This document shows positions 91 to 62,735 of a DNA stretch of 64,000 nt, in pieces. The number at the start of each line of letters is the position of its first letter. Within the stretch, counting starts at the first letter, position 1. A program made the position numbers and the translations under genes. Source of the DNA: Mytilus trossulus (taxonomy: Eukaryota); contig NC_086379.1 in NCBI RefSeq assembly GCF_036588685.1, positions 41,354,001 to 41,418,000 of the forward strand. The letters are read 5' to 3'. The notes beneath the pieces were generated by a model, which worked only from the letters and a program-made list of their open reading frames with translations, searched no databases and had not been told where the DNA came from.

Positions 91-3000
91 AAATAAATAT
101 TCAGACGAGTAAAGACATTTTACTTTATATCCTCGATGAAGTTGAAAAGATTACAAACATACAAAAGATTTCATCATTGGAATGCGAGACCAACATTAAC
201 CAAACAATGCTATCATGCACACGATGTGAAGAAAATCGTTGTCAATCGTAAGTGTTATTTGTTATTAATAATATTAATGAACAATACTCAAAGATACCAG
301 GCTTGGTTGGCTTTATAACTATTTTGATCTGTGTGTCATTGATGAATCTTATCTAGACGAAACGCGAGTCTGACGTATTAAATTATATGCTGGTACCTTT
401 GATAAATATTTAGATAAAATTCGTTTCTTTGATTTGAGAAGTTGTTTTGATATTTTACTAGCCTATGTCGCAAATTTTAAAACTCAATAATGACTCATAT
501 AAACTCAAAATGTGCATCCGTGCAAATTTTTTCCATCATCTTTAATTGAAGGGATTTGGTATGATAAACAAAGTAACAACTATCTCTCAAAGAACCGAGT
601 CACGTGGAAGTAAAGAACTACACATAAAGATCACCGTACGGACTTCCATAATGGATATTGCCCATGCTGTGTAATAGGCAATAAATAAATACCCCCGTTA
701 TAACTTTATGCAAACCAAAAAAAAAACGAAACCGAAAGCACCATCCTGAATTATGCTCATGAGACAATCAAACCAAAAAGAAATAAGACATATGGCACCG
801 ACAACCACGAATGAATGACATGTTTACGACTTCGGTCAGACACATATGAATGTGGCGGGGTTAAATATTTATGCCAGTGCTTAACTATCCCCCTGACGTT
901 AAATGTAGTATATTAGCTCGTCAGTATTCAAAGATAATAAAAATGTTGAATTGATACTCATAATCAATAAATTACTTAAAGGCTCAATAAAAGAACAGAG
1001 GATGAAAGTAAACATTGACGGTATCTTTATAGACGGGCACTATACGAATATAACCTTGAATTTTCGGATTTGATAACCAGTCTATAATAAGTTGTCAGCT
1101 TACTGACATTTTTACTGTCTTGTATCTTTAGATAACAGTTGTCGTCCGATGTGATATTTTACTAATCTGTTAATTTGTTCTTGTCCTGAACATGCATTCG
1201 ATATTTGGACATAAAGCAATCAACAATCACTAATAAAAAAAATTACTTAATCAAAAGAATACTTTTCTATATTCATTTTTCAGCACACCTCCACAAATAC
1301 ACGAACCGATGATTAAAGGATTGTTATATGAAGTAAACAAACCTATTACAAAAGCTGCTAAATTCGGACAGAATGTGGGGCAGTTGGTCAACAATCTAGA
1401 TAGAAAACTTAATTCTTGGTCTGAAGATATCACTTGGAAATTTAATGGATGGTTAAAACAAGCTGAGAAACATGCGAATAATGTTAAAAATGGTATTGTC
1501 GACACTGGTAAAAAAATTAAAACAGGTGCTGAGAATGCTTGTAAAAAAGTTTGGGGTGGAATTAAAAGTAAGATTATGATACGAATTTTAAGATATTATT
1601 ACAATTAGCTATAAACACATTTATCCGCTATTTTGTGCATTTTTCCTTGGATCTTTTTTTTGTGATAATTTTCATATCATGCTTCTCGCTTGAGATGAAA
1701 AAAATATCGCTAGAAACTAAGGAGGCCACGTGGCGTTGCTAACGAAATTGACATTGAAATTGACAACGTCGTCATAGGTAAAATAGCGATAAACAGATTA
1801 TCATTGGTCATCTCAACTCGATTGCCTTTCTCACTTTCGCTGTACCAGCTCAAGCGAGAAGATCAATCTCGTTGAGATAATCAACGATAATCTATAAATA
1901 TAATGAAGCAACGACAACCACTAAAACACAGGTTTCATGCCTGAAATATAAACAATTGCCTTATATTGTTTTTGTCACAAAAATATTACAAAATATGCAA
2001 AAGGTTATATATAAAATAAAAAGATAAATTACTTTGGATGCTCCTATGGTATCTTTCGCCTCATTTTCTTTTCAGTGATTCTCGAGGCCAAAATGTTTCA
2101 AAGTCCAACATTGTTTGATTAAATACAAGTTTCATGACTACTTGAACATTTTTCCAAAACAAATACTTCTTTAATCTCTCCATTAAATGATATATTTACT
2201 TTGAAGTACATGCAGCAATTTGACAACTAAACTATATATTACATTCAGGTATCTTTGGTAAACGGTCATCTAGACATGTGGATAAACGATGTGAACAAGG
2301 TTGTCCGCAATGCGATCGACTCGATACCAAGAGGAATAAACCGGATAAAGTGATACTATCTAGTAAGTAGAACAAAAAAAACAACTGACAGCAACCATAA
2401 ATACTGCTCTTCAAAGATTGCGGTACTTTGTCCCTGCGTACATATGTTTTATCTGCCAAAAACAAGTATCGATAACATTATTTCCTGGCAATTGCAATTC
2501 ATAGTGCCTAGATATATTGCGTTGTGCGATTGCAACACGTTTGCAGTTCTGTCAATAACCGACTTCTTGATTACCTAAAACATGTATGTGTCATATTTGT
2601 AAATATCAAAATTATTACAGAATGCACATATATAGCTTTTAACTATATTTCAGTAGTTAACCAGGAAGCTCTGCATTCAGATATATGACACAAAGCCTAA
2701 TCCATTTACTGTTAAACACGTTATTAGTTCCACTCTATTGAACTTGCAAAATTAGAATGGTTTTTTTTTTACTTCTACATAAATTCATCAAAATTGAATC
2801 GGAGTAATATCAGTGATAAATACATATGTTTATGTAATATGTGTTGGTAGGTTACTTTTTTGAGACATGAAAATGAAATTATCTAGAAATAATTCTCGAT
2901 GCTTGTTTTCAATTGTGTAAATATGTCACAATGATAAAATTGAGAAAGGAAATGGTGAATATGTGAAAGCGAAAACCACCCGACCATAGAGCAGACAACA

Positions 3001-4036
3001 GCCGAAGGCAACCAATGAGTCTTCAATGAAGCGAGAATTCCCGCACCCGTAGGTGTCCTTCAGCTTGCCCCTAAAAATATGCATAACAGTACAGTGATAA
3101 TGGACGTCATACTAAACTCCGAATTATACACAAGAAACTAAAATTTAAAATTTAAAACATATACTTTATTTAACTGTTGATTTTTTTATATGCCAATTAA
3201 TGCGATATTTATTGTTATTATAGTTTGTGGATCCAATTTCGTTTCAAAGCAGAAGAAAATAGCGACAAAATTAAAAGATTTAAGAGCTCTGTACAGTTTC
3301 ATCCTCTCGAAGAACTCGATTGTTTTGATGGTAATTATTTTGTTTTGCCTGCATTTGCCTATCATAATTTGAAGGTTCAATCGTCACTTCTCTTAACAGA
3401 ATACATTTATAAAACATAATTATATTATTATTTTATCTATCATCATTAATCATAATTTCAACATAGTGCAAAACACATAAAAATTCTTCTCCAGACAGTT
3501 TAGTATATATTTCATATACACTCAAATTTTCAGAAAAGTTGGCCGTATTTCAATGAACTTAGAACCGCCAGAAGCATTCATTTTTGGCGTTAATACAAAA
3601 TGTAATCCTGGTATTTGTGACGAGGTTATTTACAACCACTGGGTCGGTGCCACTGCTGGTGGAGTTTTAATTCCCCGATGGTATTATCAGCTCAGTAGTC
3701 AGTACTTCTCTGCTGACATGAATTATCGTTGAGATGCTAATATTTCGAGAATATCATATCTGTTACACCTTTTAAACTTGGATAATCGCTTATTGTTCTT
3801 TTAGTGGTTCGTTATAGAACAGATCAGTATAGATTTTATTGTTTTTCTTTCAGGTGGAGTATGAAAAGAAAAGTGTTCTCTTTACAGGCGGAAAAGTAGA
3901 GTTCAAGACATCATTTGTAACATTTCAAAATGGTAAAAGGAGACAACGATTTAAACTTCCAGGAATGTTTGTTATCTCTGACATTAATGGAATGTCTTTG
4001 AAAATATCACAAGAAGTTTTCAGACGAATGTTTTAA
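91..4036 (+). CDS. Gene A (5'-partial): secreted 8-Cys scaffold / amphipathic-insert precursor, exons 2-6
   Basis: Exons 91-247, 1284-1567, 2249-2362, 3224-3330, 3854-4036, all GT-AG, phases 2/1/1/0, open frame to TAA. Translation includes CETNINQTMLSCTRCEENRC / ...KKVWGGIK-SIFGKRSSRHVDKRCEQGCPQC / ICGSNF / VEYEKKS...FRRMF*. The signal-peptide exon is upstream of the window. AATAAA at 4150-4155. Confidence 0.9.
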
Positions 4037-4638
4037 CAAAAAGTCTCAAACAGGAAATCATAACCTACATTTGAATGTACAGAAATATAAGTTGTCGCTT
4101 TTTTGTATGTGTAACAAGATGCGCCCTTCGTTCATACGTATCAACAAATAATAAAAATGTTTGTCATAGTATGAGTGTTTATTCTTTTTAAATGGTATTT
4201 TATCTTTAGATATTTTCTAAATATACAATTTGCTTAGTTTTCATTTAACCGACAACAAACGTACTGTGCAAAATATGGTATTTATTTAAAATAAAAAGGA
4301 TGGTAATAGTGAATGTTAAGATATAAATATTAATAATATTGGCGTTGTCAGTTTGTTTTAGATTTATGAGTTTGACTGTCCCTTTGGTACCTTTGTCCCT
4401 CTTTTAAGAGATACAGAGTAAACGTTAACATTTTATGTCATAAGCACAAGTTAAACTAAATAGACAATAGGTGTTCACAGAGAGAACATCAAATGTGACA
4501 AGTTTTTCCCAACAACTTATTAAGGCGATACAACGTCTGTCAATAAAATCCAAATCACGAATAGCATACATAATAAAGACATTGGCTACCATTAAGGATA
4601 TTTCTTAATTAGGATAGGTTAAGGTTAAACTTTAGTAA

Positions 4639-7033: not shown

Positions 7034-7209
7034 ATCTAGAAAAGAACTGTTCTCGGGTAGAACTGTCTGTCAGGACTAGTTCTTTGTATCAGTTTAAGGT
7101 AGAACTGACCAAATCAGTTCTAGATTGGAACTGTTCTAGCTAGAACTGTCTTAAAGGTGTTAGGATGACAGTTCTACATATGAAATGAGAGGTTAGACGT
7201 GATCTACTG
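7034..7209. mobile_element. Solo end fragment of the AGAACTG-repeat element family (see 51888-56196)
   Basis: TAGAACTG/CAGTTCTA repeats ending in TGAGAGGTTAGACGTGATCTACTG, similar to the TIR at 56172-56196. Confidence 0.6.
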
Positions 7210-8848: not shown

Positions 8849-8894
8849 CACCAACAATCTGCTTCAAAATCAGCCAGCTTTTAAAACTTTTAAC

Positions 8895-11800
8895 ATGTTT
8901 ATCTCTCTACTCGTAGCAGTAGTCGCAGCACTTTGTTCCTGTAATGGAGAACTACTCTCTCTCCCACAAAATAACTTGGATAGTGAGTGAAACATTTTAA
9001 AATTGATTATTATACATGTAAATTTTATTATATCACGTCTTCTTCAACATTCCATTATGCAGTTCAGTTTATTAGTTTAGGTTACGAGCGTTCTTGGTAG
9101 AGGTTGTTTCAGAAACACGTGTTGTTAACAATGGTTAATGTGTATTAGTTTTTTTTCTAGTTTCTGTTTAGTGTCTTTAATCGATGCGCTAGGAGCCGAC
9201 ACACTGTTTCATTTATGTGTATTTATCCAATTGTACATGTATCTTTTTTTACTATTTATTATATGTACTTTAAAGCTGTTTGTCATAAATTATATGGGAT
9301 AGAGAATATATAAGTGAAATTAGCTAATTATTCTACATGCAAAGTCTGACAAACTGATTTCGTTCATGAAAAATTGCAACAAACGTTTGAATCAACTAAT
9401 GCGGTTTATTTTAATATTAGATGTGGTTTTTGATTTGTAGTCTTAATTGTACAGTCAAATTTAAAAATCACAATAATTAGAATAAAAAGATAAAAACAAA
9501 GGTTAAAAAAATTGGATAGGATATAGAAATTTTTACATTATTATAAATAAGTACAAAATTATAATGAAATGAATTCAATTTTTGCAAATAATTTTAAACA
9601 TAATATGTTTTCAGTAATAAACGACCAAGCACGAGCAGATATTGTAGATTATATCGTTGATGAAATTGATGCTACTGTAGAAGAGGAGAAGGTCCTATCA
9701 CTATCATGTGAAACCAAAGTTAACCAAACAATAAAGTCTTGTGATGAATGTGCCGGAAATATTTGTCCAGCGGTGTAAGTAGAAATGGTTTCATAGACTT
9801 GTATAAGAATATCTTTTTTGGTGCTTTCTTTTTTTTAAATAAGAAAATGTGATATTAATTTTAACTTTGATATATATATATGTTCAAATGTTTAAATATA
9901 GATCTTTATGAACCAAATTTCACGGTTGAAAGTTAGTTTTCTGTGTAGACTTTCAATGATTTACCTTGGATCTAGAAAAAAATTATCCTTTTTTAAGATC
10001 ATCAAACTGACATTGTTGCATTAAGGATAAGTGTGGCTTTCAAATTACTACAAAATCATATGTTGATAAAAAATACCACCAGGATTGGATGTTTCGTCAA
10101 CATATTAGTCAAACATGTTAAATATGATTTAACACAACACGTTAAATGTTTTATCTTAAAAGGCAATACATGAGTCTCTGAATTGGCTTTTTCAGTAATA
10201 GGGTTTCAGATTGAAATATTCATTTTTTAAAACTGAATATCTACGGTTACATATTTCGAAAACCATGCAAAGTTCACATTATTGCTTATTACCCATTATA
10301 TTGTCATTAGAGTATCCAAAATATTACACAAAAAGGACACATTTAACAGTAAATAGGCACATGAAAAAGTATGAGTATTTCTTATTTGAATTGAAGTTGA
10401 AACTATTTGTAATCCTTGTAGAGAACTTAGACAAGAGCGAAAGAAAATAGATTTAAGAAAGTTACTAAGTGTGATCCACAAACCTGTGGTACTTGTAGCA
10501 TCTATCGGTAAAAAAGTAGTAAAGGAAGCTGCTAGGTTTGGAAAGAGGATAGGAAAAGTGGTTAATAGAATTGGTGATAAAGTTAAAAGTACAGTAAAAA
10601 AAGTTAGAGTCGGAATTAAAAAAATCGGATCAAAAATAGGAAGTCATGTTAAAAGATTAGGAAAGGGAGTCGCTAAATTCGGCAAGAATATTGGACGAGG
10701 TGTTGCCAAAATAACCAAGAAGGTGGGACGTGGTATCAAGAAATTTGGACAAGGTGTCAAGAAAACTGGCAAAAAAGTTTGGAAGAAAATTAAAAGTATG
10801 TTATGATATACAGATTAATGTTTTAATTTAACTTATAATTGAATTGTCTGAAAAAAATCCGTTCCTCGTGATGATTAATGAAAATAACTCTTTCAACTTC
10901 ATGAAATGTTAATGAATAATTTGTCTTTCAAATATGTTTACTAACAGGTTTGTAAGTCTCATCAAGCTAGTTTTTCATTTTGTGTCCTTCCATATATTTT
11001 ATTATTAACTATTAATTTAACTTTATATTCAAGTTTTCAATTTGATTTGTCATGTACACTGTTTCTTAATAGCATTTGAAAATTTTGGTTTTCTCCCTTA
11101 CAGAAATATTTGGAAAACGATCAACCAGACACCTAATTGAAAAGCGTTGTGTAAGCAGTTGTCCAGTTTGTGACAAACTTGATAAAGACATATTCACGGA
11201 TGAACAAATAGTTGGAAAAAGTAAGTATAAAGTTAATATCTAGATAAGTTATATATTATATATAATATTATATAGTTTTATAGGTAATGACTCGATGCCC
11301 TTCACAAATGCTTGAAATTAACATTTGGTTAATGTTCGTCATCTTCAATTTTCGTAAATGGTGTCGTAATAACTTAGGTCATTAACCTTCTTGTTTGAAT
11401 TGTTTCTCATTTTTCATGGTGAGTCCTTTAATACTAGTATTCAACTTTACGGTATGGCATGGTCTCGTTGTTGAAGGTCGTAAGCCGTAAATGATCATAT
11501 TCACTTATTTGCATTCTTTTTATGCAATCATACCACATCAGTATATTTTTAAATTGTACTTTGTACCAAAAAAATATTAACAATTTCTTTTTTTTGTTGT
11601 TAAGTTAAAAGGCAATTTTAAGAATGCTATACGCGAAATTTAAATTAAAAATATATTTTCTTTTATAACTGTACATTTTCTGCTTTATTTGCAGTATGTG
11701 GGGCAAGTTTTGTTTCAAGACAGAAACAATTATATGAAAAAGTGAGAGGTTTAGAGGACACATACAACTATATAGTGTCCAATGCACCTGTAGTGACAAA

Positions 11801-12768
11801 GGTAATATTTTTCTTATAAGCCTGCTTATACAAATATGTATAAAGTCTAAGATGATGTGGTTAAAAAATTGTTTTATTGTTCATTTGTAACATAGAGGTT
11901 TTATTTTCCTAATACATGTATCATTTTCTTTTGACAAAATTGAACGTTATGTAAAAAAACAAAACATTATTATGTACTCATAAACAGATAGACAGTAAAC
12001 GTAAAAGATATGGCCACTTAGCGACAAAAAACCCCACAAAAACAGTCTTTTCACAGTGTATTGCATTTGAAATATATTATTCAAACTAAAACCGCACTGA
12101 TGATTAAATAAATCCATTTAAGAATTTAGATGAATTCCGTGTGTATGGTTTGAAATAATTTGCATATTGAATCAATATTATCTACAAAATCATATAAGCA
12201 TTGTAATCCCTTTAAGCTATACAGGCTATATTTTTCAAAGTAATTTGAAAATATAAAAAACTACTTGACTGTATTTTTTATAAGAATTCATACATCACAC
12301 AACAAACTTAAAGGCACTATATTTTGTTTGTTAGAGCTTCTTTGCCATAGATTTTTGAATTGGTGGTGTAACAGATCTATTTCTATTTTTGTGTGTAAAA
12401 ATATAAAAAAGACGCCAATCTACCAATCTAAAAAAGTCATTATAATTGATATTTTGTTGTATAACCATCCAAGAATTAAATACAGGATTTCCGTCCAGCG
12501 TTGAAAGTAAACTTTTTTTTAAAGATTGATCTTCTATAATGTCATTATTTGTAAACTGCTATAACCTGTACTTTATATTTTTCAGGTGGAATATGAAACA
12601 AGTAGTATTATTATAGTCAACGGGAAATTGGCATTTAAAAAGTCCTTTGTAACGTATCAAACGAACAAAATCAAGAGGAGATTTCAGCTTTCTGGACTAT
12701 TTGAAATCTCTAACATAGATGGTATGGCCATCAAAATATCAAAGGATATATTAAAGAAAATGCAATAA
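8895..12768 (+). CDS. Gene B: secreted precursor (342 aa) with a highly cationic amphipathic insert; putative antimicrobial-peptide precursor
   Basis: Exons 8895-8982, 9615-9774, 10422-10795, 11104-11220, 11695-11801, 12586-12768; GT-AG; total 1029 nt in frame. Signal peptide MFISLLVAVVAALCSCNG; CETKVNQTIKSCDECAGNIC; Lys/Gly-rich exon 3; KIFGKRSTRHLIEKRCVSSCPVC; ICG; VEYETSS...KKMQ*. Function is inferred. Confidence 0.92.
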
Positions 12769-18153: not shown

Positions 18154-18202
18154 CATACATGTATATCTGCTTCCAAATCACTCAATGTGTGATACCTATA
18201 AC

Positions 18203-24948: not shown

Positions 24949-25206
24949 GACGAAATAGTTGTGAATGATTTATTGTTGGCAAGTTTTACATTGTCTGAAT
25001 GAAATTTCATAAATAAGGAAATGTTTTAAGGTAAATCATGTCAAAAGTTTTGACAACTTACATGCGTTTGTATACAAATTAACATGTCAAAACAAACGTA
25101 TGTCGTATTTCTGTAAATGTGTAATTTTGAAGGTATATAACACACAGTGCTACAAGTTGTGTATATTAACCTCTAGATTTAAATGACTGTGCAAGCTGTA
25201 ACTTTT
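24949..25206 (+). promoter_or_regulatory. Gene D promoter / 5' UTR (homologous to ~36960-37215 of gene E)
   Basis: TATATAA 25134-25140; colinear similarity with the region upstream of gene E (e.g. AAAAGTTTTGACA, TTTTGAAGGTAT, CCTCTAGATTTAA). Confidence 0.55.
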
Positions 25207-31200: not shown

Positions 31201-31513
31201 CCTCTGTCAAGATCTACTTTCAACCTTTGACATTGGAATTAATGCTATGTTAACAATGAATAATAGATAACTTAACGGATACCAACTACAGTATTGTCAT
31301 TTTGTATTTCAGATTGAGTATGATTTGTCTTCAATTGCACTTGATAGTCCAGATAAAATTTATATGGACTCATTTTACACGATCGGAGGATTACAGATGC
31401 AATTGTTTGCCGGTGTCCTAAACATTTCATCACCTGAAGAGACAGGGATGTCAATAGCACAACAGTTTTTCGCTACCGAAATAGCTGATAGACAATCACG
31501 CACGACAGTCTAG
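25207..31513 (+). CDS. Gene D: secreted precursor (~382 aa) with a neutral apolipoprotein-like amphipathic insert
   Basis: Exons 25207-25333 (alternative in-frame ATGs at 25183 and 25210), 26183-26339, 27862-28316, 29395-29499, 30434-30537, 31313-31513; GT-AG; in frame. Hydrophobic leader followed by RYKR; CQSKLNSTIDGCTTCKADIC; TLGKLFRRKRCVSSCPSC; VCG; IEYDLSS...RTTV*. Confidence 0.9.
27586..27785. mobile_element. Small mariner-like MITE (TACCGTA...TACGGTA) in intron 2 of gene D
   Basis: Short terminal inverted repeats with internal TTTTCGC / GCGAAAA repeats. Confidence 0.55.
29700..30055. repeat. Copy of an abundant dispersed repeat (core ACGCCAGACGCGCGTTTCGTCTAC...ACTCATCAGTGACGCTC)
   Basis: The same core recurs at about 340-400 (-), 13910-14040, 16510-16640, 27395-27530 (-), 33260-33510, 38130-38270 and 41765-42210. 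Confidence 0.8.
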
Positions 31514-43532: not shown

Positions 43533-46500
43533 ATGAGGTCGTTGATATTCTTGGCTGTTATAACTGCTGCTGTATTCCAATGCAATTGTTCCAGTATTGT
43601 CAAAAGGCAATACTTTGCAAACTTGGACGATGGGAACTTACAAAGTAGGTATAAGTTTTTCAAAATTATGGATTAAGTTAACAATAAATAACATGATACC
43701 TTATATTAGGAAAATACAATGTTGGTTCGCAGTGATAGAAATCAAAATGCTGGACCGTTCAAAATGTGTATTTAAAACATCAGAAGAACACTCACTCCCG
43801 GTTTATCACATTAAAAATTGCTAGTCATCACTAACTTGTTGAACCCAGTTCCCTTATGATATCGATGTTTAAAATTTGAAGTAGTAAGTTGGTCTCCTAG
43901 TCGATACGATAGTCCGTAGGTAAAATAACAATATATATGATGACTTTATTGACAAAAGGTTAGCACTTAAAATGAAGCTATTAAACCAAGGTGATGAAGT
44001 TGAAATCATCCTTTTGAAAAGAAAAAAAAATATATGTTTCACTGATGACGACGAATATGTTCAATTTTCTCTTGACATCTCGTAGTTAATAGAAACATCA
44101 CCCAAACGATAAACAGGTGATCAACACAACGATTGCCACATGTGAAGCAGGAATTGCTTATTCTTCTGGGGAACCCGAAATTACGCCTGGTTTTTGATGG
44201 AGTATCCGGTTTTTGTGGCATTGTTCACTCTGAATGCATTTGTGTATTAGTGTGAATTATGTTCGTCTTTATCTTGTGTTTATTTGAGGGGACGGTGTTG
44301 CTTGTATTTATAAATAAAAAGAAGTGGATTTTATGAAAACAAGACAACTTTCCATCTAAATCACAACTTATAAAAGTTAACAATTATAGTTGGCTCACAC
44401 AAAACAGCAAGCTAAGGCTCTAAAGGGCCAAACACAAATAGGAAGTGTAAAGCTATTTAAACAGAAATACCAACAGTCAAATATATATGTTAAAGAGAAA
44501 CAAGAAACAAGAAACACCTATAAACCATTCCAACAAACCACTACTACAGAACAACAGGCTCCTGACTTAGGACAACTGCATACAAATGCAGCGGGTATTA
44601 ACGTTTTTTTAAACACCTTTGCCCTAACCCAAGACCGTAGTCACTGTGCTTAAACGGCCGTGGGTAACTTAAGTTACCCACAGCCCAAGATGGAGCCGCC
44701 TGGCTTCGGTTAGGAAGTTTGCTTCTATATAACTACAATACCATGTATACAAAAGAAATGTTCAGTAATTAAAAAGTTATATAAATCTTTTAGGGAAACT
44801 ATGCAATGTAAAACGTGGTTTGTTAATACAAAAAAAACGATTACAGCACGATTTTCCAAAACACTTATGATGTCCGTAACTTCAAAACATCTTGTCCGTA
44901 ACTTTTTTCCTTATACCAAAAGGGATGTCCGTAACTTTAGCATGATGTCAGTTACTTTCAAAGAATCTTTATTCATGTATGTAATTATTTTTAAAAAGAA
45001 ATGATAAATAACAAAAATACCGAACTCCTAGGAATATTCAAACGGGAAGTCCTTTATGGAACGGCAAAGCCAAAAGCTCAATTTTACACACCAAACGAAT
45101 GGAAAACAACGGTCATATTCCTGCCTTGGTACAGGCATTAAAGTCTCTTATCAAATGGAAAACCCCAAAGCTCAACTGAATGGATAACAATTGCTATTTT
45201 CCTGACTTGGTACAGGCATTTTCTTATGTAGAAAATTGTACAGAAAAATCAAGGTATCTTACATTCTACTGGCTTTATAGATTGTTAACTGCTTAAGTTT
45301 TAGATGATAAATCATGAAATGCAGGTTATAAATCTCACCATTTTCAACTGTAGAAATTACATAAATAGTGAACATATGAAAATCACCTTTAATAGGAGAA
45401 CAAGTTCGGAGGTAAATCCTTAGCAGAAATACATAGATGAATCAGTCCAAACCTCTAAAGAAGATATGTATGATTTGATACCCGATCTTATTGAATCCCT
45501 GAGGTCAATGAAACTTTTAGAAGATTTTAAATCTACCTTTATTGCTTCAATAAAATGACACCTGTTTAACAATATAGCCTTCCATCTACTCCTAGATATT
45601 GGCATTTTTTCTTTCTCACAATCAACAACACATCTAGCTAGATATGGTGAAGAGACCATACTTTTTGGCTAACAATTCAAAAATTATTTAAAGGAAAGGG
45701 TACCATTTTTTTCTGCGGCTACACAGGCCAAGGACTTATCAGTACACAATCTATAAAGCTAGAAGAATGTTAGATAAATTTCGCCGTACCGTCAGATCCC
45801 GTTTTATTCCGGGAATAATTTTTAAAAAAATAATGGAAAATCTGTGACACTCTGGTTTGCTCGTTATCTATGTAATAATTAAGGGGTTTAATAGTGTTTG
45901 TTGTCCTTTAAGTGTTGAGATTGTTAATCTTACAATTTTGAGAAAAAGTTACCCACATCCGAAAATGAAGTTACGGACAGTCTTATTATTTTTGACATAT
46001 AAGTTACGGACATCTTATGCATTTTTTAAAAGTTGACCTTGCGCTGAAGTGAAGTCAAAATTAACAAATTTGTAGTGACGGTAAGTGATTTCTTTATTCA
46101 AAAATCCAATCCATATTTACAAAGATCATGAAAAAACGTTGCAAAACGTAGATTTCGTATCAACTATCATCTCAACAAGTTTAGAGTCCGCCATCTTGGG
46201 CTGTGGGTAACTTAAGTTACCCACGGCCGTTTAAGCACAGTGGTAGTGTAAAAAACATAAAAAGACACACTAGAAAATATAAATTGAGATGGGTTAACTC
46301 GATCAAAAAGATATTTAAACAAAAACAGGTGAACATACACTAAACGAATACGTTTGATCTATGACAATATTAAAACGTAGGTGTCTGTATAAGTAAAGGT
46401 ACCAGTACATTGCTGGTGTTCAAAAGTCACGATTCGATTGAGAGAAAATGAATCAGTTACAAACTAAAGCCGAGGGATACACATCAAACACAGAACTACT

Positions 46501-49500
46501 GAAGTGAAACAAAAACAAACGCCAACTACATGACAGGAATACAGCACAAACAAACGCCAACTACATGACAGGAATACAACACAAACAAACGCCAACTACA
46601 TGACAGGAATACAGCACAAAAAAACGCCAACTACATGACAGGAATACAACACAAACAAACGCCAACTTCATGACAGGAATACAACACAAACAAACGCCAG
46701 CTACATGACAGGAATACAGCACAAACAAACGCCAACTACATGACAGGAATACAACACAAACAAACGCCAACTTCATGACAGGAATACAGCACAAACAAAC
46801 GCCAACTACATGACAGGAATACAACACAAACAAACGCCAACTTCATGACAGGAATACAACACAAACAAACGCCAGCTACATGACAGGAATACAACACAAA
46901 CAAACGCCAACTTCATGACAGGAATACAGCACAAACAAACGCCAGCTACATGACAGGAATACGCACAAACAAACGCCAGCTACATGGCAGGAATACAGTG
47001 CAAACAAACGCCAGCTACATGACAGAAATACAGCGCAAACAAACGCCAGCTATATGACAGGAATACAGCACAAACAAACGCCAGCTACATGACAGCAATA
47101 CAGCGCAAACAAACGCCAGATACATGACAGGAATACAGCGCAGACAAGCGCCAGATACATGACAGGAATACAGCTCGAACAAACGCCAGCTACATGACAG
47201 GAATACAGCACAAACAAACTCAGGAACACTGAGCACAAACAAACTCAGGAACACTGACACAAATAAATAATATAATAGTACATCACAACATGTAAACCAC
47301 AACAGAATAACAACACATATCTTCCATTAGCGACAGCACGGGACGCCACAAACAGTGACGTGTATTATATAGATGTTATAGGTAGTAACAAAAAAAATAG
47401 ACGTAGAAAGAGTGTCAATATGGCAACCTGTACCTAAAACAAATGGCGTTAAATAAATCAACGTCCACATATAACGTTGGGTATAATTATTTTGTTGTAT
47501 AAGAAGTACGGAAGTAAATTTATTTTACAAAATTCATTAATTTGTTGTTCATTGTAAGAGTACAGAAGTGACTAGGACTACTGTATGATAACATTGGTAT
47601 CTTATTACTTTAAACTCGCCCACAATGAATCATTAAGACAACTTTTACATTGTATATGTAGCATTCATATGTATAATCATTTTGGTGAAATGCCATTTTA
47701 TCAAAAATGTTTTAATTTTTCAGAGCTTGATATTGAAGTTAGACGAGAAATTATAATAATGATCGTAGAACAAATCAACAAAACAGCAGAACAACAAAAA
47801 CAGTTGTCAAAGACTTGTGAAGTTAAAATCAATGGCTCTATCGACAACTGTAAAGCTTGTAATCAAGACTTGTGTGTCCCGTGAGTTGGTTTTATCATGA
47901 TTTTGAATATTTCTATACACAATGTTCTTAAATATTATAGAATTAAGAAACGAGCTCCTGTCATTGTTGTAAAACATGGAAGAATTGTTAGCAACATAAA
48001 ATTTAACGAAAACATTAGTAATTGTGTAGGGAAGATAATCATTGTTAAGTTATAAAATGTATATACCTTAGAATAGAAGAACGTCTGAGTCAGTGACAAC
48101 TTTACAACAGAATAGAAGATATACAGTAGATGAATCATACTTTCACGGTTGTGTGTTTTTTTAGATAAAATGTGTTGTTGTGTAAGTTTACTCACGTAAA
48201 TGAGACATATATATACAAAAATGTATATTTGTTTTTAGACAGCCACCTCCTGTTTATGAAGCTATTCTGATAGCTGTTGGAACAGAGGCCCTCAAACCAG
48301 TCCTTGCTGCAGGAGAATTTGTAAAATCTATTGGATCACAATTGTCATCCACTACCAAATTCCTAGGAGGCGAAGCAGGCGAATTTGTTAAAGACCTTGG
48401 AAGCGTTTCTAAAAACATTGGCAATGGTTTAAAAGATGGCGTAAATAAAGCTTTGGATACGATAGGATCTGGTTTTGAAAGTCTTGGCAATAAATTCGCA
48501 GATCTCGGTAACAGCTTGGCTTCTGGAGCAACTGATCTAGCAAACGGTCTAGGAAGTGGTACAACAGATTTGTTGAATGGACTTGGATCAGAATTTACAG
48601 GTCTATCTGGCCAGCTTGGAGGTGGATTAGACTCACTAGGTGGTTCACTTACGGATCTTGGTAACAAACTCGTGGATGGAGTCAAGAATGTAGGAAATTC
48701 GATTGGAAATACATTTGGTCGTGAGTTATACTACGCAAAACATACTAGATATCCATACCATGTAATTATTTCTCTAGAATGGGTAGTTTTTAATTACAAT
48801 GATACCGCTCCCGTTATTTCAGGAGCGAGCACAACTTTTAACATAGAAATAATTAATTAAGTTACATGTATATAAGACATATAACCATCATACACATTCA
48901 TATTAATAAGTCAATTCACAATACGACAATGTGACGTTCTTTACTTTAAAATGGTGTCATACTGTGATAGATGATTGTATTTAAAATTTTGGTTTTCAAA
49001 TGAATATTGAACATATTAGAAAAAAAAAAATTTGAATAATTATAATTAATTTTAAGTATTTTAATGACAAAATGATAGAAAAGTGTCGAATTTTAAATAT
49101 GTTCCTGTCCATTATACAGATATTTTTGGTAAACGTTGTGTACAGACATGCCCAGTATGTGAAAAACTTGATATAAAGAAACACACAAAGGAAGAAGTTT
49201 TACAATCAGGTATTATTTTTCATTTTATAGACTGTATTAGTTTTAGTGCAATGTTGAGTCTATAGATTTTCTATCTTTCTAATCTTTAAGTGTTGGTTTT
49301 GCATTGATGTTGGTCAAATAGGCTTTGTATATCCATTTCTTTTTTTAAACTCTGCTGTGAGATGTCTCTTTGACAATAATACTACATCTCATTATATACT
49401 TCACTAGAAAATGTATATTTAAAGTGCAAAATTATAATTAATATTAACTTCTTTTTGTCTCTTATTGATAATTGTCTTTTTTTGTGTATTATTATTAATA

Positions 49501-50391
49501 AGCAACACTGCATATCCTTGTTACAATTATTTCTACAAAACTAATCAAACAAAAAAACGAAGCAAGCAAAATATGCTTCAAAACTTTTCAGTGATTCTTG
49601 GAATAAGAAGATTTTTTTTTATTTTGCTCAAACAGTTGTTATGTTAACAATTTCAGTGTGTGGAGCAAATACGATTTCCAGTCAAAAGAATGCTATTGAA
49701 ACAATTGCATATCTCAGATCTCTTTACAACACTACCCTCACAAACCATATCGTATCTAAGGTAAAGTATTGATAAAGATTCTTAAATAAAAAAAAAGTAT
49801 ACCTTATTTTCACTTTATCCTCTGTTTGTTTTTTTGTTTTTTAAGAATATCGTTTTAGTGGTCTCATAAATCGGGAATGTGAAGATACTATTAGTATGGC
49901 TTTTTGAGTCAAAAGAGGCGCAACATACCGAAGGAGTGTTCAAGCTCATGAGTCGAGAATAAGCTGAAAACGCCATGGCAAGAAAAAAAAAGAAGCAAGA
50001 CAACAATTCATACTAGTATACAAAACACAGCGCAGAAAACTATATACTGAGTAGATATTTCATAACTGTCAACCAACTCGTAAGATTTCCGAAAACGAAT
50101 CGTGAGTATGTCGTTCTACTTTAATATCTATTAATATATAAATTGATGAAGATAATGTGCAGTCATCATTAACGATCTAAAATACTTGAACATATCTTTT
50201 TCTGATTTCTCTTGCAGGTTGAGTATGATCCAACTTCAATTAAAACAGTTGGTGGTGTCTCCTTTACAAATAATTTTGTAACATACACACTGTACGGACA
50301 AACCGTCCGTCTTCATTCTAGCACAGACTTAAAAATAACAGACATAACAGCAACCGCAAAGACAGTTGCTCATCAAATTTTGAAAAAATAA
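43533..50391 (+). CDS. Gene F: secreted precursor (372 aa) with a Gly-rich, net anionic 11-mer amphipathic insert
   Basis: Exons 43533-43644, 47724-47880, 48239-48720, 49120-49209, 49657-49760, 50218-50391; GT-AG; total 1119 nt in frame. Signal peptide MRSLIFLAVITAAVFQCNC followed by IVKR; CEVKINGSIDNCKACNQDLC; HIFGKRCVQTCPVC; VCG; VEYDPTS...ILKK*. Exon 1 is assigned across a 4-kb TE-filled intron by phase and by similarity to exon 1 of G. Confidence 0.88.
44642..46242. mobile_element. Non-autonomous Transib/RAG-like DNA transposon in intron 1 of gene F
   Basis: Perfect 52-bp TIRs (44642-44693, 46191-46242) starting CACTGTG; 5-bp TSD GTAGT (44637-44641, 46243-46247); subterminal TGTCCGTAACTT x3 on the left and AAGTTACGGACA x2 on the right. 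Confidence 0.8.
46509..47220. repeat. 35-bp minisatellite (ACAAACAAACGCCAACTACATGACAGGAATACAGC), about 20 copies, in intron 1 of gene F
   Basis: Directly visible tandem units, degenerating toward the right end; explains the Cys/Val-rich minus-strand ORFs at 46561-47302. Confidence 0.95.
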
Positions 50392-57220: not shown

Positions 57221-60200
57221 ATGGCGTTCACTATGTTATTAGTTGTACTGTGTACATCATTAGTCGCTCTATGTGAGGGAAGACAAAAAGTCCTTACACT
57301 GGCAACTTTGGACACAAATAGTACACAAAGTAAGGTATTTTAGCACTTGCTTGATCATGATGAGTGGTTCTATAACAATATACCGGTATACATATTAAAC
57401 AAATTCAACAAATGTATTAGTGTGGAGGACTTTTGTTTGCTTCTCTCTGTCAAATACAACGTTATAAGTTTTTAAAAGAATTAAGTGAATGGATAATATA
57501 TAAATAATAATGGACTGGGAAAAAGAAAAAAATTGAAAGTTCATTGGCATAAAACTTTGAATATTTGGCGGGAAATTATTCTCTCTAGATTTTTTGGACA
57601 TTTAACAATGAAACCTTTTTCTTTAACAAAAAAAAAACCAATCTATGAAACATAACAAGAACAAGATTTAAAAAAAATTAGCTTTTTAAGCTATAATATG
57701 TGTTGGAATTATAAAGAGGAAATTCAGAGTTAGCAGACAAATTTTTAATGGCACTACATGGATAAGACCAGAGGATTCCAAATATCTGCCAAGAATTAAG
57801 AAGAAAATCAGCGATCATCCTTATATCTTAAATTTCTAATCTCGAAAAAATCCTTTGGACATTTATCAAAATCTACATGCTGTTTAACGTTTAATATCTT
57901 TTTCTTAACTTGTTGTTTTTAATATAAGCTTTTATATGTAGAATTTGATACCTATGTGAGAAGAGAGATACTGTTTTATATACTTAGAAAGATAAATGAA
58001 ACAAACTTTGCCCAGCTCTCATCATCCACTGAGTGTGAAATGAAGATTAACAGCACTGGTGAACAGTGCCAACAATGTCTTGCTGGAGTGTGCCGAAAGT
58101 AAGTTCTAAAATATGACTTCACGTTTAGTGAACACACACTTAAGGATGTGAGTGTGTGTTAATATGTGTTCTATGATCATTCTTAGTATTCAAATACGTT
58201 CTTTCTTCTCCGAGTTTAAAAACATTGACATATGTACAGAAAATATTTATTATGGTAATTATTTGGATTTTCGTAAATATGAAAATATGAAGATGTATTA
58301 TTGTTGTTAATGAAACAACCATCCTACAGAGACCGATTGTCGCAGATTAAAAACACATTTAGGTTACCGCTCGTACTTCAACAATGAGCAAAACCATACC
58401 GTTTAGTAAGCTATAAAGTTTTCGACATGTCAAGACAACTAAAAAGAGAAAAAAACAACGGCCTGATCTTTGGACAAACAATAATTTTATAACGTTAATC
58501 AAATATGATAAGTAGCAACCGATAAAATATATTATGTTAATAAAAAAAACGAACTTTTATACTTTTCAGCAATACGCAAATGTTATATTATCAAAACTCG
58601 ATCAAACAGATTATGCCAACTATCTTTAAGCCAGTATTAGAAGTGAGTAATTTTGTGGACAAAATGGGGAAATCTTTACCAGCTGCTCTAGGATTATTGG
58701 GAGAAGAATCCGGATTGTTCCTTGAAGGACTTGGTCAAATATCTTCTCATCTTGGTTCAGGTTTGACAGGCTTAAAGGAATTCTCTGGAATCGCTTCTAA
58801 TTTACAGTCTTTGGGAGGTAAATTAACATCGCTCTCAAAAGATGTGATAACTGTAAATATCAACAAATTACCAGAGTTTGGTAGTCAGGGCAGCATATTA
58901 GAAACATTGGTACAGCTTGGAGCTCAGAGTTTACTTGATCAAGTCAAAAATAGCTTTTCAAGTATCGGCGATGCGTTAACAGATCTCGGTAACAAAGTGG
59001 TTGGTGGAATTGCAGTCGCTGGAAATGCTGTCATAGATACCGGTAACACTATAGGGAACGCCTTTCATAGTGAGTATACACTTTATTTATTTTGCTGATA
59101 TATTGATTATGCTAAACACCAAATATTTCAAAATTGAAATCACTTAAGGAGATTTATTTCTTGTGTTTTCGACTCTAGAATCTCCAAACTCAGTCAATGA
59201 AAAACATGTAATTACATATCAAAGGGGGATTAACTACGCAAAAAAATACATGTGCGATATCTTAATATATGGAGGTAAACTGCGCTAAAATCCCGATCCT
59301 GCTTTATGAGGGAAATGCATGTCGTCGTGTCATTCATGGGTGGTAAAAACTTAGGAAATGATAATCATATTTGGTGTATCAATAAACATGGAAATAAGGA
59401 GGGATTAGGTCTACGACAAATTGTATTATCCAGTCATGTGCGATAGAAAATTGCGTATCAGCAAGTCATAAAAAATCGAGATGACTTTGGAGTTACCATA
59501 AAATCATTGGTTCCACAGCTTCATAGTGATCGTAACCCTTTATCAGCATTAGCTAGTTTCTTCTAATAGTCGTGCGTATAATATTACCGCGATTAGTTTA
59601 AACATATTTATTTAGAGTGGATTGGGAAACAAGTTTTGCAACTTATATTAATCCCTTTCCACTTTGCGGGTGCGAGTGCTGCCTTGTAGCGGCATTAGCC
59701 TACTCTTTTTCGAACTCTACAAGGGTGTCTTTAACGTGCAAGAGATATGGCTCTCTCTTAACACAGGTCAGCTATTTATCGTCCCCTTCCGACGGACTAT
59801 CATCGTTTCCTTAAGACCATACTCGCAAATGGTGTCAAGGGAGTGCCGAAAATTGAGTTCCTGAAATTTTCATCCCGAACGGGAATCGAACCAGGAACCT
59901 TTGTGTTAGTAGTCCGATGCACTAACCACTACACCACGGCTCTCTACCGCGATTCGAAACCATCTGCAATTTTTTACTCTTCCTTTACAAACTAGTAGAC
60001 CTCCTGATGTTAGTTGGACTGTGTGCTGCTTTTTTATTATTATTATTCCACTTTAAGAACTGGTGGTCGAACAAGATAGGCAAAGACTGCTATGACTTTT
60101 TTTTTGCTATCAAATTAATTTATCGTAAATTTACAAAGGGACAAAAGAGGAGCGAAAGATACTAGAGGGACTGTCAAACTCATAAATCGGAAATGAACTT

Positions 60201-62735
60201 TATGTTATTACAAACTCGATAAATAGTCAATTCGGTCGGTCACAATCGTGAAAAGGGAACGGGATTAATTGTAGTTACGACATAAGGAACATAACGGATA
60301 TCATCTGTGAAACTGGTATTCCATAACGGTCAACCAACTCCTGATGGCGACTGTAAAATTTACGAAGGCATGACTTCAACTTCACTATTTAAGTGGAACT
60401 TTTGGTACGATAACTTCATTGTGAGCACCAACCCTCTATCAAGGAATCATGATAGATAATACAAGCCCGGGGATATCGTATCAGTTTGGAGATATATACT
60501 CCATATGCAAGCGCTGCAGGAATGTTGCTACATAGAAACGGAAAGTTCAGTTGAAACGAGAAGCTGAAATATGCAATAATTATTTCTTTATTTCTAGGTA
60601 TATTTGGAAAGCGTGTTTTGTCTGTTGAGAAACGAGACTGTGACGACCAGTGCCCGGTTTGTGGTAAAATTGATCAGATGTCACATGACACAATGACTAT
60701 TTTAGCAATAGGTAAATTATACTTTGTGTGAATCTGACATACACTAACTTAAGTCACTGCACTCAAAATCTTTATTGATGCATCGCTGTAGCATTTGGCC
60801 CAGGAACACAGTTATTGTCCTTTTCAGAATCTAAGTCTTCATTTTTATTTCTCAAATAGAAAGAAGGTGGAGTAAATTTACACTTAAAAAAAATGGGTCA
60901 TGAATTTTAAAATTAAATAGTGATTTGGTCCAGCTTAAGGTGAAAGATTAGTATTCTGGAAACTGTCAAAAGAGTTCAAGACCGCCTTAACATAAAATAG
61001 ACCATTATATCTAAAGTTAGAGCTGATAAAGAGTTCTATAATTTTGAATGGATATAATTTTTTTTTACCTAGGACTAGGAAAACAGTAATTCAACCTTTA
61101 TTTAACTATCATGATGAAATGCTTACTTTGTATTTGCTGAGAAATTGCAGTGATATTGTAATGGATGGTGACACTTTAATAAAATAAATCTGATCTTATC
61201 TTATCTTATAACCGTGACCAATATTGTTCGTATTATTGACTCCTGTGCAATTACTATCCTCAACATATTCAAGCACAAGGGATCTCATATAAGTTTTAAA
61301 ATATCAGGATCTGTGAAGAAAATGTGCATATTTTTTTTATTACAGTTTGTGGCGAAGGAATAATATACAATCAACGTAATACTCTGGAGCAAGTCAAATA
61401 CCTACAAGGAATTTACAACAATACCATCCAAAACCAACTCATTACAAAAGTAAGTATGCTGTTTATCTTTTAATAATAATATGTTCTCTTTGATATATAT
61501 CAAATCGTTTTGAGTTTGTAAGTTACATGTCTGATGAAGTATTCTCTGAATCACCAGGTCCCATGTTCATCGTGCTATTTGGATACAAAATAAATATAAT
61601 AGTGAGACGTGCAACCTACCATGAACAAAAAAAACATAGCTTCAACTTATTCATCACTTCTTTGTTTTTTACAGGAGATTTGGCCATGGACCCTATTTTT
61701 ACTATATTTTTTGTGTGTTTTTTTTTTAATTACGTTCACAAAAGTCAATCTATGTGTCTCGGTTTATGATACATGTATATGGAGACCATCACTGCAACAA
61801 ATTTGTTATGATATTTCTCCACTCGAGACTGTAAAATTTGATATTCAAAGCGCGAGGCTTACCGGGCGTTTGAAATAATTAAAATTAATCTGTTGAGACA
61901 AATCTTAATATGGGGACGAAGTCCCCAATAACAGTAGAAAATTCAATAAAATAAAAAATTCGGGAAAATTTCCCGAATTTTTCATTGAACTAATGAACTC
62001 AAAATCGTTCAATTTTTTTTATGTCATGTTTTGAAATCCCGGACCTGCGCAGAAATCTACAAAGTACTTCCTTTTTCCGGTTTCATGAGAAAATATATAT
62101 TTATCAGTCTAGTATAAAATAGGAGAAGGACTGCAATACCAATTTCATTTTTTAATAATTCCTTGATATGATAAAACGTTACCTGATGAAAGCGTTTCTT
62201 TGTTTACATTGCATATGACGTCATAACTTAAATAACGTCACAACTAAAATCCCTAACAACAGAACCTAAATCGGAAACGTAAAGGTATTTCCGTTTTTTT
62301 TTTACAAATATTTAGGTTAAAAAAAATCATACAGACTTCGTCCCCATTAACAGGTGATCATTATGCCTGCCTCATATTAAAACGAGTTATAGTGACGGAA
62401 TTTGTTTGTCTTAGCCTTTTCATCCCTTATTTGCTGAAAGTTTTGCATGTTCTTTTTGTGTGACGTCGCCTTTTTTCAAGTATATTTGAAGTAAAAAAAA
62501 ATTGCCTCGTGAAGTTAATTTTTGAATGATAATTATTATGCATATATAATTACAGGTTGAATACGATCCTTTGTCAATTAAAACAGACCACAGAATAGCT
62601 TTTTCCAGGGCTTTTATGACATACAGTGTCCATGGAAGTGTGGACAGATTTCAGACAGATAATGACTTTGAAATAAGTGATCTGAAGAAGTCAGCGAAAG
62701 ATGTCGCTAAGCATATTTGGCAACTTATGAATTAA
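57221..62735 (+). CDS. Gene G: secreted precursor (387 aa) with a Gly/Leu/Ser-rich amphipathic insert; closest to F
   Basis: Exons 57221-57329, 57942-58098, 58570-59069, 60598-60711, 61346-61449, 62556-62735; GT-AG; total 1164 nt in frame. Signal peptide MAFTMLLVVLCTSLVALCEG; CEMKINSTGEQCQQCLAGVC; SIFGKRVLSVEKRDCDDQCPVC; VCG; VEYDPLS...QLMN*. Confidence 0.9.
59595..59944 (-). mobile_element. tRNA-derived SINE, second full-length copy, in intron 3 of gene G
   Basis: Reverse complement of 52455-52804 with scattered substitutions; TSD TACCGCGATT (59585-59594, 59945-59954). Confidence 0.9.
61908..62377 (+). mobile_element. MITE/HINE-like element copy 1 (intron 5 of gene G)
   Basis: Ends ATATGGGGACGAAGTCCCC (hairpin) and GACTTCGTCCCCAT...GCCTGCCTCATAT; TA on both flanks. 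Confidence 0.8.

What the first reader, a model, noticed from the sequence alone, without database searches (positions are those of the whole stretch)
91..62735. Seven-gene tandem array of an unrecognised secreted 'disulfide scaffold + swappable amphipathic payload' family
Seen: seven same-strand paralogs share six exons, intron phases 1/2/1/1/0, a signal peptide, eight invariant Cys (C-x10-C-x2-C-x4-C in exon 2; C-x3-C-x2-C in exon 4; C-G in exon 5) and a V/I-E-Y-[ED] C-terminal domain. Scaffold exons are almost fixed in size (exon 2 157-166 nt, exon 5 104-107 nt). Exon 3, which sits in the middle of the Cys framework, varies from 284 to 626 nt, barely aligns between subfamilies, and always encodes a long amphipathic helix followed by a dibasic cleavage site. 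Known: cathelicidins and annelid BRICHOS precursors pair a conserved prodomain with a hypervariable antimicrobial exon, but there the peptide is C-terminal. Proinsulin has an internal processed segment between disulfide-linked chains. The mussel AMP families I know (defensin, mytilin, myticin, mytimycin, myticalin, CRP-I) do not have this layout. Inference: a modular secreted membrane-active or host-defence system, with an internal payload carried by a two-chain scaffold.
Basis: partly seen in the sequence, partly recalled or inferred. Interest (0 to 1): 0.95.

Follow-up and report, generated by a model that had tools for sequence, protein, structure and literature searches.

The report
Mussel clusterin-like secreted protein gene array
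Seven neighbouring mussel genes encode secreted, disulfide-braced proteins whose layout and predicted fold most resemble vertebrate clusterin (apolipoprotein J), so this looks like an unannotated, expanded invertebrate version of a known extracellular chaperone/lipid-binding design, not a wholly new peptide-delivery system.

Summary
Seven + strand paralogs (91-62735) have six exons, all-GT..AG introns in phases 1/2/1/1/0, eight invariant Cys, a signal peptide and a conserved C-terminal domain. One spliced model is residue-for-residue a Mytilus trossulus RefSeq "uncharacterized protein".

The family is unnamed and has no Pfam hit, but it is not without precedent. Its first Cys cluster (C-x10-C-x2-C-x4-C) has exactly the spacing of clusterin's first four Cys. 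The second cluster mirrors it antiparallel. An invariant KR/RRKR site sits between the clusters. AlphaFold models of two subfamilies both return human clusterin as the top three of 350,542 PDB chains (E 1.6e-3 to 1.1e-2).

Exon 3 is not a swappable payload:
- It is homologous and collinear across subfamilies.
- It lengthens by 33-nt (11-residue) repeats.
- It is under purifying selection (dN/dS 0.11).
- It is acidic in four of the seven genes.
- It lacks a conserved N-terminal release site.

Best reading: clusterin-like two-chain secreted glycoproteins with an apolipoprotein-like amphipathic middle, strongly cationic in genes 2-3. The genome holds at least 18 members. Earlier notes of this scan cover parts of this same window only.

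The parts
91..4036 (+). Gene 1 (exons 2-6; exon 1 lies upstream of the window)
   Evidence: Exons 91-247, 1284-1567, 2249-2362, 3224-3330, 3854-4036. Exon 1 is at L009:9718-9805.
8895..12768 (+). Gene 2 (cationic middle, net +37)
   Evidence: Exons 8895-8982, 9615-9774, 10422-10795, 11104-11220, 11695-11801, 12586-12768.
18203..23722 (+). Gene 3 (longest, cationic middle, net +44)
   Evidence: Exons 18203-18290, 19015-19180, 20279-20904, 21146-21256, 21461-21564, 23540-23722.
20574..20864 (+). 33-nt x 8.8 tandem repeat inside gene 3 exon 3 (11-residue units)
   Evidence: Tandem Repeats Finder: period 33, 80% matches, score 307.
25183..31513 (+). Gene 4 (acidic middle)
   Evidence: Exons 25183-25333, 26183-26339, 27862-28316, 29395-29499, 30434-30537, 31313-31513. 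382/390 identical to M. trossulus LOC134727111 (P0009).
37216..42508 (+). Gene 5 (acidic middle)
   Evidence: Exons 37216-37339, 38797-38953, 39435-39889, 40852-40956, 41560-41663, 42311-42508. The upstream start codon used by the relatives reads GTG at 37189.
43533..50391 (+). Gene 6 (acidic, Gly-rich middle)
   Evidence: Exons 43533-43644, 47724-47880, 48239-48720, 49120-49209, 49657-49760, 50218-50391. The model is 372/372 identical to M. trossulus LOC134727044 (P0017).
57221..62735 (+). Gene 7 (acidic middle)
   Evidence: Exons 57221-57329, 57942-58098, 58570-59069, 60598-60711, 61346-61449, 62556-62735.

Best explanation
The window holds seven functional paralogs of a Mytilus family of secreted, N-glycosylated proteins built like clusterin (apolipoprotein J). 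The order along each protein is: (1) a signal peptide; (2) a long helix carrying the first Cys cluster (C-x10-C-x2-C-x4-C, exon 2); (3) a long amphipathic 11/3-periodic helical middle (exon 3); (4) an invariant KR (IFGKR or RRKR) convertase-type site; (5) a second Cys cluster (C-x3-C-x2-C-x17-C, exons 4-5) that would pair antiparallel with the first; (6) a coiled-coil helix; and (7) a small three-stranded sheet plus C-terminal helix (exon 6). Inferred mechanism: the precursor folds and forms four inter-segment disulfides in the ER. A furin/PC-type protease then cuts at KR, giving two chains that stay disulfide-linked. The amphipathic middle stays attached as the C-terminal half of the first chain and ends in a hydrophobic, Phe-rich tail that may be amidated. 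That middle acts as an exchangeable, apolipoprotein-like surface binder for lipid, hydrophobic or charged surfaces. Paralogs differ mainly in the charge and length of this arm. Genes 4-7 are mildly acidic, consistent with a chaperone- or lipid-binding role. Genes 1-3 are cationic, and the 11-residue repeats in genes 2-3 carry +37 and +44, consistent with binding microbial membranes or polyanions. Shown here: gene structure, conservation, periodicity, charge, purifying selection, and fold and Cys-pattern resemblance. Inferred: secretion, cleavage, disulfide pairing, ligand and function.
For: Gene models and conservation. Clusterin's disulfides are 102-313, 113-305, 116-302, 121-295 and 129-285, with cleavage at R227/S228 and N-glycans in the Cys region (PMC10488069). 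That gives C-x10-C-x2-C-x4-C(-x7-C), identical to exon 2, and a mirrored C-x2-C in the second cluster. Clusterin's three domains are a coiled coil, a disulfide helical domain, and a three-stranded sheet wrapped round the last helix (PMC12527946). The AlphaFold model of P0017 (= gene 6) shows the same element order. Foldseek of that model against 350,542 PDB chains ranks clusterin 7zet_A, 7zeu_A and 7zeu_D as 1-3 (E 5.2e-3, prob 0.97). The model of P0009 (gene 4 type, 28% identical) again ranks the three clusterin chains 1-3 (E 1.6e-3). VIA-align: 7zet_A Z 6.5 (198 aligned, model 30-372 vs chain 25-441; only the clusterin chains span the whole model) and Z 6.9 at rank 1. A divergent paralog on contig C2 has the same six exons and phases, and its exon 4 carries GRKKR followed by C-x9-C-x6-C-x2-C, clusterin's exact spacing. 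That exon's only Pfam hit is PF01093 Clusterin (E 0.047, profile positions 269-296). It is tied to the family by the exon 6 profile (E 7.8e-6 genome-wide; 8e-11 locally). Amphipathic periodicity and charge. The exon 3 part of the model resembles the apoE N-terminal bundle (Z 7-7.9), with sub-threshold ApoLp-III and ApoC-I hits. All 14 copies in the two arrays are intact, with dN/dS 0.11-0.18.
Against: There is no significant sequence match to clusterin. Pfam PF01093 does not hit the window proteins and scores nothing above cut-off in the whole genome. Profile and sequence searches against PDB do not find 7ZET. The Foldseek E-values are modest, TM-scores are low (0.17-0.26), and the model pLDDT is 63.7 and 49.8. 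The two models also share most of their alignment rows, so they are not fully independent. The wide VIA search lists only generic helix bundles, and Z below 8 can be a common helical arrangement. The family has 4+4 Cys, not 5+5, and the fifth Cys of the C2 paralog's first cluster may be intronic. Cleavage, disulfide pairing, secretion, expression site and function were not tested. A two-chain complex prediction gave no verdict.
Confidence: 0.6

Rival explanations
1. Host-defence precursor family. The Cys scaffold is a carrier or prodomain, and the exon 3 helix is cut out and released as a membrane-active (antimicrobial) peptide or set of peptides.
For: Genes 1-3 encode very cationic amphipathic helices (+8, +37, +44). 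Five genes carry the IFGKR motif (Gly-Lys-Arg, the classical amidation and cleavage signal). Genes 2 and 3 also have internal GKR/GKK/RKK sites. Tandem expansion to at least 18 genes is typical of mussel immune effectors. This could hold for genes 2-3 on top of the clusterin-like build.
Against: Four of the seven genes have acidic middles with no dibasic site at all in exon 3, so nothing could free the N-terminal side. Exon 3 is homologous in all subfamilies. It is under stronger purifying selection than the scaffold (dN/dS 0.11 vs 0.18), unlike arms-race peptides. The scaffold resembles a functional protein (clusterin), not a disposable prodomain.
Confidence: 0.2
2. A lineage-specific Mytilus secreted family that resembles clusterin only by convergence (helical hairpin braced by a Cys ladder). 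It would have an unrelated role, for example a mucus, byssus, shell-matrix or gamete-coat component.
For: No significant sequence similarity to any known family. Hits came from named Mytilus species only (galloprovincialis, trossulus, edulis, coruscus, californianus), apart from a few unnamed Logan/ENA contigs. The structural scores are in the range where helical proteins can match by chance (notes).
Against: Exact identity of three consecutive Cys spacings with clusterin. A further three are identical in the C2 paralog. The processing site sits in the same position, an N-glycan sequon lies in the first Cys loop, the small beta/alpha C-terminal domain is the same, and clusterin ranks first in two fold searches. 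Nothing points to a structural-matrix composition.
Confidence: 0.15

Closest known systems
Clusterin / apolipoprotein J (CLU, CLUL1; Pfam PF01093; PDB 7ZET, 7ZEU)
   Same: Both are secreted glycoproteins. The first Cys cluster has the same C-x10-C-x2-C-x4-C spacing, and a second cluster mirrors it for antiparallel pairing. A convertase site lies between the clusters, flanked by hydrophobic, Phe-rich residues. Both have amphipathic helices, a long coiled-coil helix after the second cluster, and a C-terminal three-stranded sheet plus helix. Clusterin is the top Foldseek hit for two subfamily models.
   Different: Four rather than five Cys pairs. The second-cluster spacing differs (x3/x2/x17 vs x6/x2/x7 for the equivalent Cys). 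The cleavage site abuts the second cluster. The middle is a much longer 11/3-periodic helical region, expandable by 11-residue repeats, and in genes 2-3 it is extremely cationic. The family is multigene (at least 18 copies), whereas human CLU is single-copy (PMC10488069). There is no significant Pfam or sequence match.
Exchangeable apolipoproteins (apoE N-terminal domain, apolipophorin-III, apoC-I)
   Same: Long amphipathic helices with 11/3 periodicity. The exon 3 part of the model superposes on the apoE four-helix bundle (Z 7-7.9, rmsd 2.7-3.0, about 115 residues). There are weak ApoLp-III and ApoC-I Pfam hits.
   Different: All hits are below Pfam cut-offs, and the structural match is of the generic helix-bundle kind. 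Apolipoproteins lack the two Cys clusters and the C-terminal domain.
Precursors of helical antimicrobial peptides (cathelicidins, BRICHOS-AMP precursors) and proinsulin-type two-chain processing
   Same: A conserved secreted scaffold combined with a variable amphipathic region. Dibasic processing and a possible amidation signal. Tandem gene expansion.
   Different: The variable region is internal and is homologous among paralogs. It is acidic in four of seven genes, under purifying selection, and has a conserved cleavage site on one side only. No cathelin, BRICHOS or insulin domain was detected.

Membership tests
Clusterin (PF01093) | Significant match to the family profile | tested here: not met
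   No PF01093 hit at E<=10 for exon peptides or for full-length orthologs. The whole-genome six-frame search found nothing above the cut-off. Only the divergent C2 paralog's exon 4 hits it weakly (E 0.047, 13.1 bits vs cut-off 23.6).
Clusterin (PF01093) | Two Cys clusters linked by five antiparallel disulfides (102-313, 113-305, 116-302, 121-295, 129-285) | tested here: inconclusive
   The first cluster's spacing is identical for four Cys. The second cluster has a mirrored C-x2-C, but there are only 4+4 Cys. Actual pairing cannot be tested with these tools.
Clusterin (PF01093) | Internal furin-type cleavage giving two chains | tested here: inconclusive
   An invariant KR lies immediately before the second Cys cluster, with RRKR in genes 4-5 and IFGKR in five genes. 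Cleavage itself was not testable.
Clusterin (PF01093) | Three-domain fold: coiled coil, disulfide helical domain, three-stranded sheet around the C-terminal helix | tested here: met
   The secondary-structure order of the models matches the published description. Clusterin chains rank 1-3 in both Foldseek searches. Full-length VIA alignments give Z 6.5 and 6.9. The strength is moderate: low TM-scores and pLDDT of 50-64.
Clusterin (PF01093) | Secreted, N-glycosylated, with sequons in the disulfide domain | tested here: met
   Hydrophobic N-terminal exon 1. An invariant N-x-[ST] sequon lies inside the first Cys loop in 7/7 genes, and a second sequon upstream in 5/7. This rests on sequence features only.
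Clusterin (PF01093) | Holdase chaperone / lipoprotein activity | not testable with these tools
   Needs biochemical assays.
Cationic alpha-helical antimicrobial peptide precursors | Cationic amphipathic mature peptide | tested here: not met
   Met only in genes 1-3 (+8, +37, +44). Genes 4-7 are -2 to -6.
Cationic alpha-helical antimicrobial peptide precursors | Processing sites on both sides that free the peptide | tested here: not met
   The C-terminal KR is conserved. An N-terminal dibasic site exists only in genes 2 and 3, and genes 4-7 have none in exon 3.
Exchangeable apolipoproteins (PF07464 ApoLp-III, PF04691 ApoC-I, apoE) | Profile match above cut-off | tested here: not met
   Best scores are 15-17.5 bits against cut-offs of 28-36.

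The most novel reading that the evidence does not exclude
The family consists of true remote homologs of clusterin. That would place the origin of this extracellular chaperone/apolipoprotein before the protostome-deuterostome split. In mussels the scaffold would then have been multiplied (at least 18 genes) and re-tooled: the tail/helix region next to the cleavage site grew by 11-residue repeats into a +37 to +44 membrane- or polyanion-binding arm in some paralogs. An extracellular chaperone design would thus have been converted into a host-defence effector while sister paralogs kept an acidic, chaperone- or lipid-binding arm.
Probability: 0.3. Interest if true: 0.8.

Novelty: new variant of a known kind. 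Interest (0 to 1): 0.6.

Why it matters
I found no paper describing an invertebrate clusterin relative in the searchable library. These mussel proteins are all annotated "uncharacterized". If the resemblance reflects homology, it gives clusterin an invertebrate history and a natural experiment: one genome holds at least 18 copies that keep the disulfide/coiled-coil/C-terminal scaffold while the charge and length of the functional arm next to the cleavage site vary. That bears on how clusterin's tails and amphipathic helices work. It also offers candidates for extracellular proteostasis, lipid transport or antimicrobial defence in bivalves. If the resemblance is convergent, it shows the same solution (an antiparallel Cys ladder holding two chains around an amphipathic binder) arising twice.

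Tried and rejected
- Pfam scans of every exon type and of full-length orthologs found nothing above cut-off.
- PDB sequence and profile searches gave only chance hits: colicin A, leptin, designed coiled coils.
- ESM Atlas gave no usable hit, twice.
- Pfam Clusterin against the whole genome found nothing above cut-off.
- The wide VIA search returned generic helical bundles only.
- Structure prediction on an alignment padded with exon fragments failed and was repeated with full-length rows only.
- Two-chain complex prediction (P0017 residues 28-254 with 257-372) gave no verdict, score 0.02. It is evidence neither for nor against.
Exons were searched one by one by reference. Database proteins identical or near-identical to the spliced models (P0017, P0009, P0001) stood in for full-length searches. 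Exons were joined only inside local scripts, to check frames, identities and dN/dS.
- All three word-indexed homolog searches found named hits in Mytilus only, and missed even the paralogs of genes 1-3 and 7. Absence outside Mytilus is therefore not shown.
- The fifth Cys seen after exon 2 of the C2 paralog was rejected as evidence, because both in-phase donor sites lie before it.


Full report
OBSERVATION. The window has no N and is about 31% G+C. A six-frame motif scan finds C-x10-C-x2-C-x4-C exactly seven times, all on the + strand. Each is followed in order by a long open frame, C-x3-C-x2-C and [VI]EY[ED]. I set the exon borders from splice-site context. All 34 introns are GT..AG with phases 1/2/1/1/0. 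Exon 2 is 157-166 nt, exon 3 is 284, 374, 626, 455, 455, 482 and 500 nt, and exon 5 is 104-107 nt. Every model is open to a single terminal stop.

Exon 1 (a hydrophobic N-terminus plus a conserved LD motif, phase-1 donor) was found for genes 2-7. Gene 1's exon 1 lies about 200 nt before the window. The eight Cys, the KR before the second cluster, the CG at the start of exon 5 and the EY at the start of exon 6 are invariant.

ARE THE MODELS REAL GENES? An exon 3 peptide searched against 1.84 billion representatives retrieved a 390-aa Mytilus galloprovincialis protein with exactly the predicted junctions. The gene 6 model is 372/372 identical to M. trossulus LOC134727044 (P0017). Gene 4 is 382/390 identical to LOC134727111.

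Proteins of 373-390 aa sit on Logan contigs of only 1.15-1.3 kb and align ungapped, end to end, with the gene 6 and gene 4 models. Such contigs must be spliced mRNAs. This is indirect RNA support.

All sources call these proteins "uncharacterized". None carries a Pfam domain, apart from two older gene-model fusions.

FAMILY SIZE. Profiles of exon 6 and exon 2 searched in the window's own genome find five groups:
- the seven genes of the window;
- a second, collinear seven-gene array 9 Mb away on the same contig (C7:50.38-50.445 Mb);
- a single gene at C7:28.88 Mb;
- two genes on C9;
- a divergent gene on C2.

The second array is 85-95% identical at the nucleotide level, introns included. All 14 genes are intact. 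Copy-to-copy pS is about 0.09. dN/dS is 0.18 for the scaffold exons and 0.11 for exon 3.

WHAT EXON 3 IS. Its hydrophobicity spectrum peaks at 99-101 degrees per residue in all seven genes, beyond all 500 shuffles. It therefore encodes long amphipathic helices with roughly 11/3 periodicity. Net charge is +8, +37 and +44 in genes 1-3, and -3, -2, -6 and -3 in genes 4-7.

Exon 3 peptides of different subfamilies align collinearly from the same starting point (BLASTP E 2e-7 for gene 4 vs 6, 4e-8 for gene 2 vs 6, 9e-12 for gene 1 vs 2). The full-length alignment has invariant columns across exon 3. Gene 3's extra length is a 33-nt x 8.8 tandem repeat, that is, 11-residue units.

Per-exon identities show that exon 3 is somewhat more diverged between subfamilies (14-25% vs 20-50%). 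In the young pair, genes 4 and 5, it is not (76% vs 59-80%). Genes 4-7 have no dibasic site within exon 3, and only genes 2-3 have one near its N-terminal end.

So exon 3 is one ancestral region that has drifted in charge and length and is now conserved. It is not an exchangeable cassette, and in most paralogs it cannot be cut free.

WHAT THE SCAFFOLD IS. The Cys pattern led me to clusterin before any search. The literature gives clusterin's disulfides as 102-313, 113-305, 116-302, 121-295 and 129-285, cleavage at R227/S228, and N-glycans at N86 and N103 beside the first cluster (PMC10488069). This means C-x10-C-x2-C-x4-C-x7-C paired antiparallel with C-x9-C-x6-C-x2-C-x7-C.

The mussel exon 2 has the same first three spacings. 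The second cluster (C-x3-C-x2-C-x17-C) keeps the central C-x2-C in the mirrored register. The innermost pair is missing on both sides. An invariant N-x-[ST] sequon lies in the first Cys loop.

The crystal-structure paper describes a coiled coil, a disulfide helical domain, a C-terminal three-stranded sheet wrapped round the last helix, and Phe-rich tails created by furin cleavage (PMC12527946). The AlphaFold model of P0017 (pLDDT 63.7, pTM 0.64) has these elements in order:
- a long helix through the first cluster;
- a helical middle;
- a coil containing the KR site;
- two short helices at the second cluster;
- a long helix;
- three strands and a terminal helix.

Foldseek against 350,542 PDB chains ranks 7zet_A, 7zeu_A and 7zeu_D first to third (E 5.2e-3, prob 0.97). 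A model of P0009 (28% identical, pLDDT 49.8) again puts the three clusterin chains first (E 1.6e-3 to 1.1e-2). VIA-align gives Z 6.5 and 6.9 over the whole length.

The residues next to the KR site are hydrophobic and aromatic (F, W), like clusterin's tails.

The C2 paralog adds a bridge. It has the same six exons and phases. Its exon 6 matches the family profile (E 7.8e-6 genome-wide, 8e-11 locally). Its exon 2 has C-x10-C-x2-C-x4-C. Its exon 4 has GRKKR followed by C-x9-C-x6-C-x2-C, clusterin's own spacing. That exon's only Pfam hit is Clusterin, at the right profile positions, though weak (E 0.047).

LIMITS. No sequence method links the window proteins to clusterin significantly. The structural scores are moderate, and helical proteins give middling Z values easily. 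The two models share most of their alignment rows, so the second fold search is not a fully independent replicate.

I therefore do not file the family under PF01093. I call it clusterin-like in architecture and predicted fold, probably a remote homolog (about 0.6-0.7). Cleavage, disulfide pairing, secretion and function are inferred. The two-chain complex prediction gave no verdict.

MECHANISM PROPOSED. The precursor enters the ER, is glycosylated, and forms a four-rung antiparallel disulfide ladder. A convertase cuts at KR. In genes 1-3 and 7 a second KR excises a short spacer, and the Gly before KR could give a C-terminal amide.

The two chains stay linked. The amphipathic middle, attached to the first chain, can fold back as a bundle (apoE-like in the model). 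It could also open onto lipid, hydrophobic or charged surfaces.

Acidic paralogs are candidates for holdase or lipid-binding roles. The cationic repeat-expanded paralogs are candidates for binding microbial membranes or polyanions.

Exons were searched by reference, and database proteins were used for full-length work. The joined-model search step was left out. No N stretches occur in the window.

Noticed in passing
G000:C7:50379001-50449000 (L001-L007): A second, collinear copy of the whole seven-gene array lies 9 Mb away on the same contig. It is 85-95% identical, introns included. All genes are intact, with pS about 0.09 and dN/dS 0.11-0.18. It is either a segmental duplication or a misplaced, very divergent haplotype.
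   Followed up: partly
L011/L012 (G000:C2:10704900-10714300, minus strand): A divergent family member with the same six exons and phases. Its second Cys cluster has clusterin's exact C-x9-C-x6-C-x2-C spacing after GRKKR. Its middle exon is Met/Gln/His/Asn-rich (236-aa open frame). Exon 4 gives a weak Pfam Clusterin hit.
   Followed up: partly
L013-L015 (G000:C9:20205001-20235000) and L008 (G000:C7:28871001-28881000): Three more 4+4-Cys members: a tandem pair about 19.7 kb apart on C9 (RRRR...RR before the Cys cluster) and a single gene-6-like copy on C7, minus strand.
   Followed up: partly
window 37189-37216: Gene 5 reads GTG where the relatives (gene 4, P0001) have their start ATG. The next in-frame ATG at 37216 still leaves a hydrophobic N-terminus, so the signal peptide is probably just shorter.
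   Followed up: partly
window 43645-47723: Intron 1 of gene 6 is 4,079 nt, against 612-1,457 nt in the other genes. It holds a 35-nt x 20 tandem array (46513-47219) with strong AT skew. I did not test that.
   Followed up: no
window 41785-42224 vs L004-L005 (second array, about 50413830-50419944): A 440-nt stretch of gene 5 intron 5 is amplified to about 17 tandem copies (period about 355 nt) inside intron 5 of the gene 4 copy in the second array.
   Followed up: no
window 53464-54515: A 258-nt x 4 tandem repeat, with nearby 25-53-nt palindromic-looking repeats (51980-52321, 56017-56151), in the gene 6 to gene 7 intergenic region. It is probably transposon debris.
   Followed up: no
window 1492-1500 (gene 1 exon 3): Gene 1 has a ninth, unpaired Cys in the amphipathic middle. 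It could form intermolecular disulfides.
   Followed up: no
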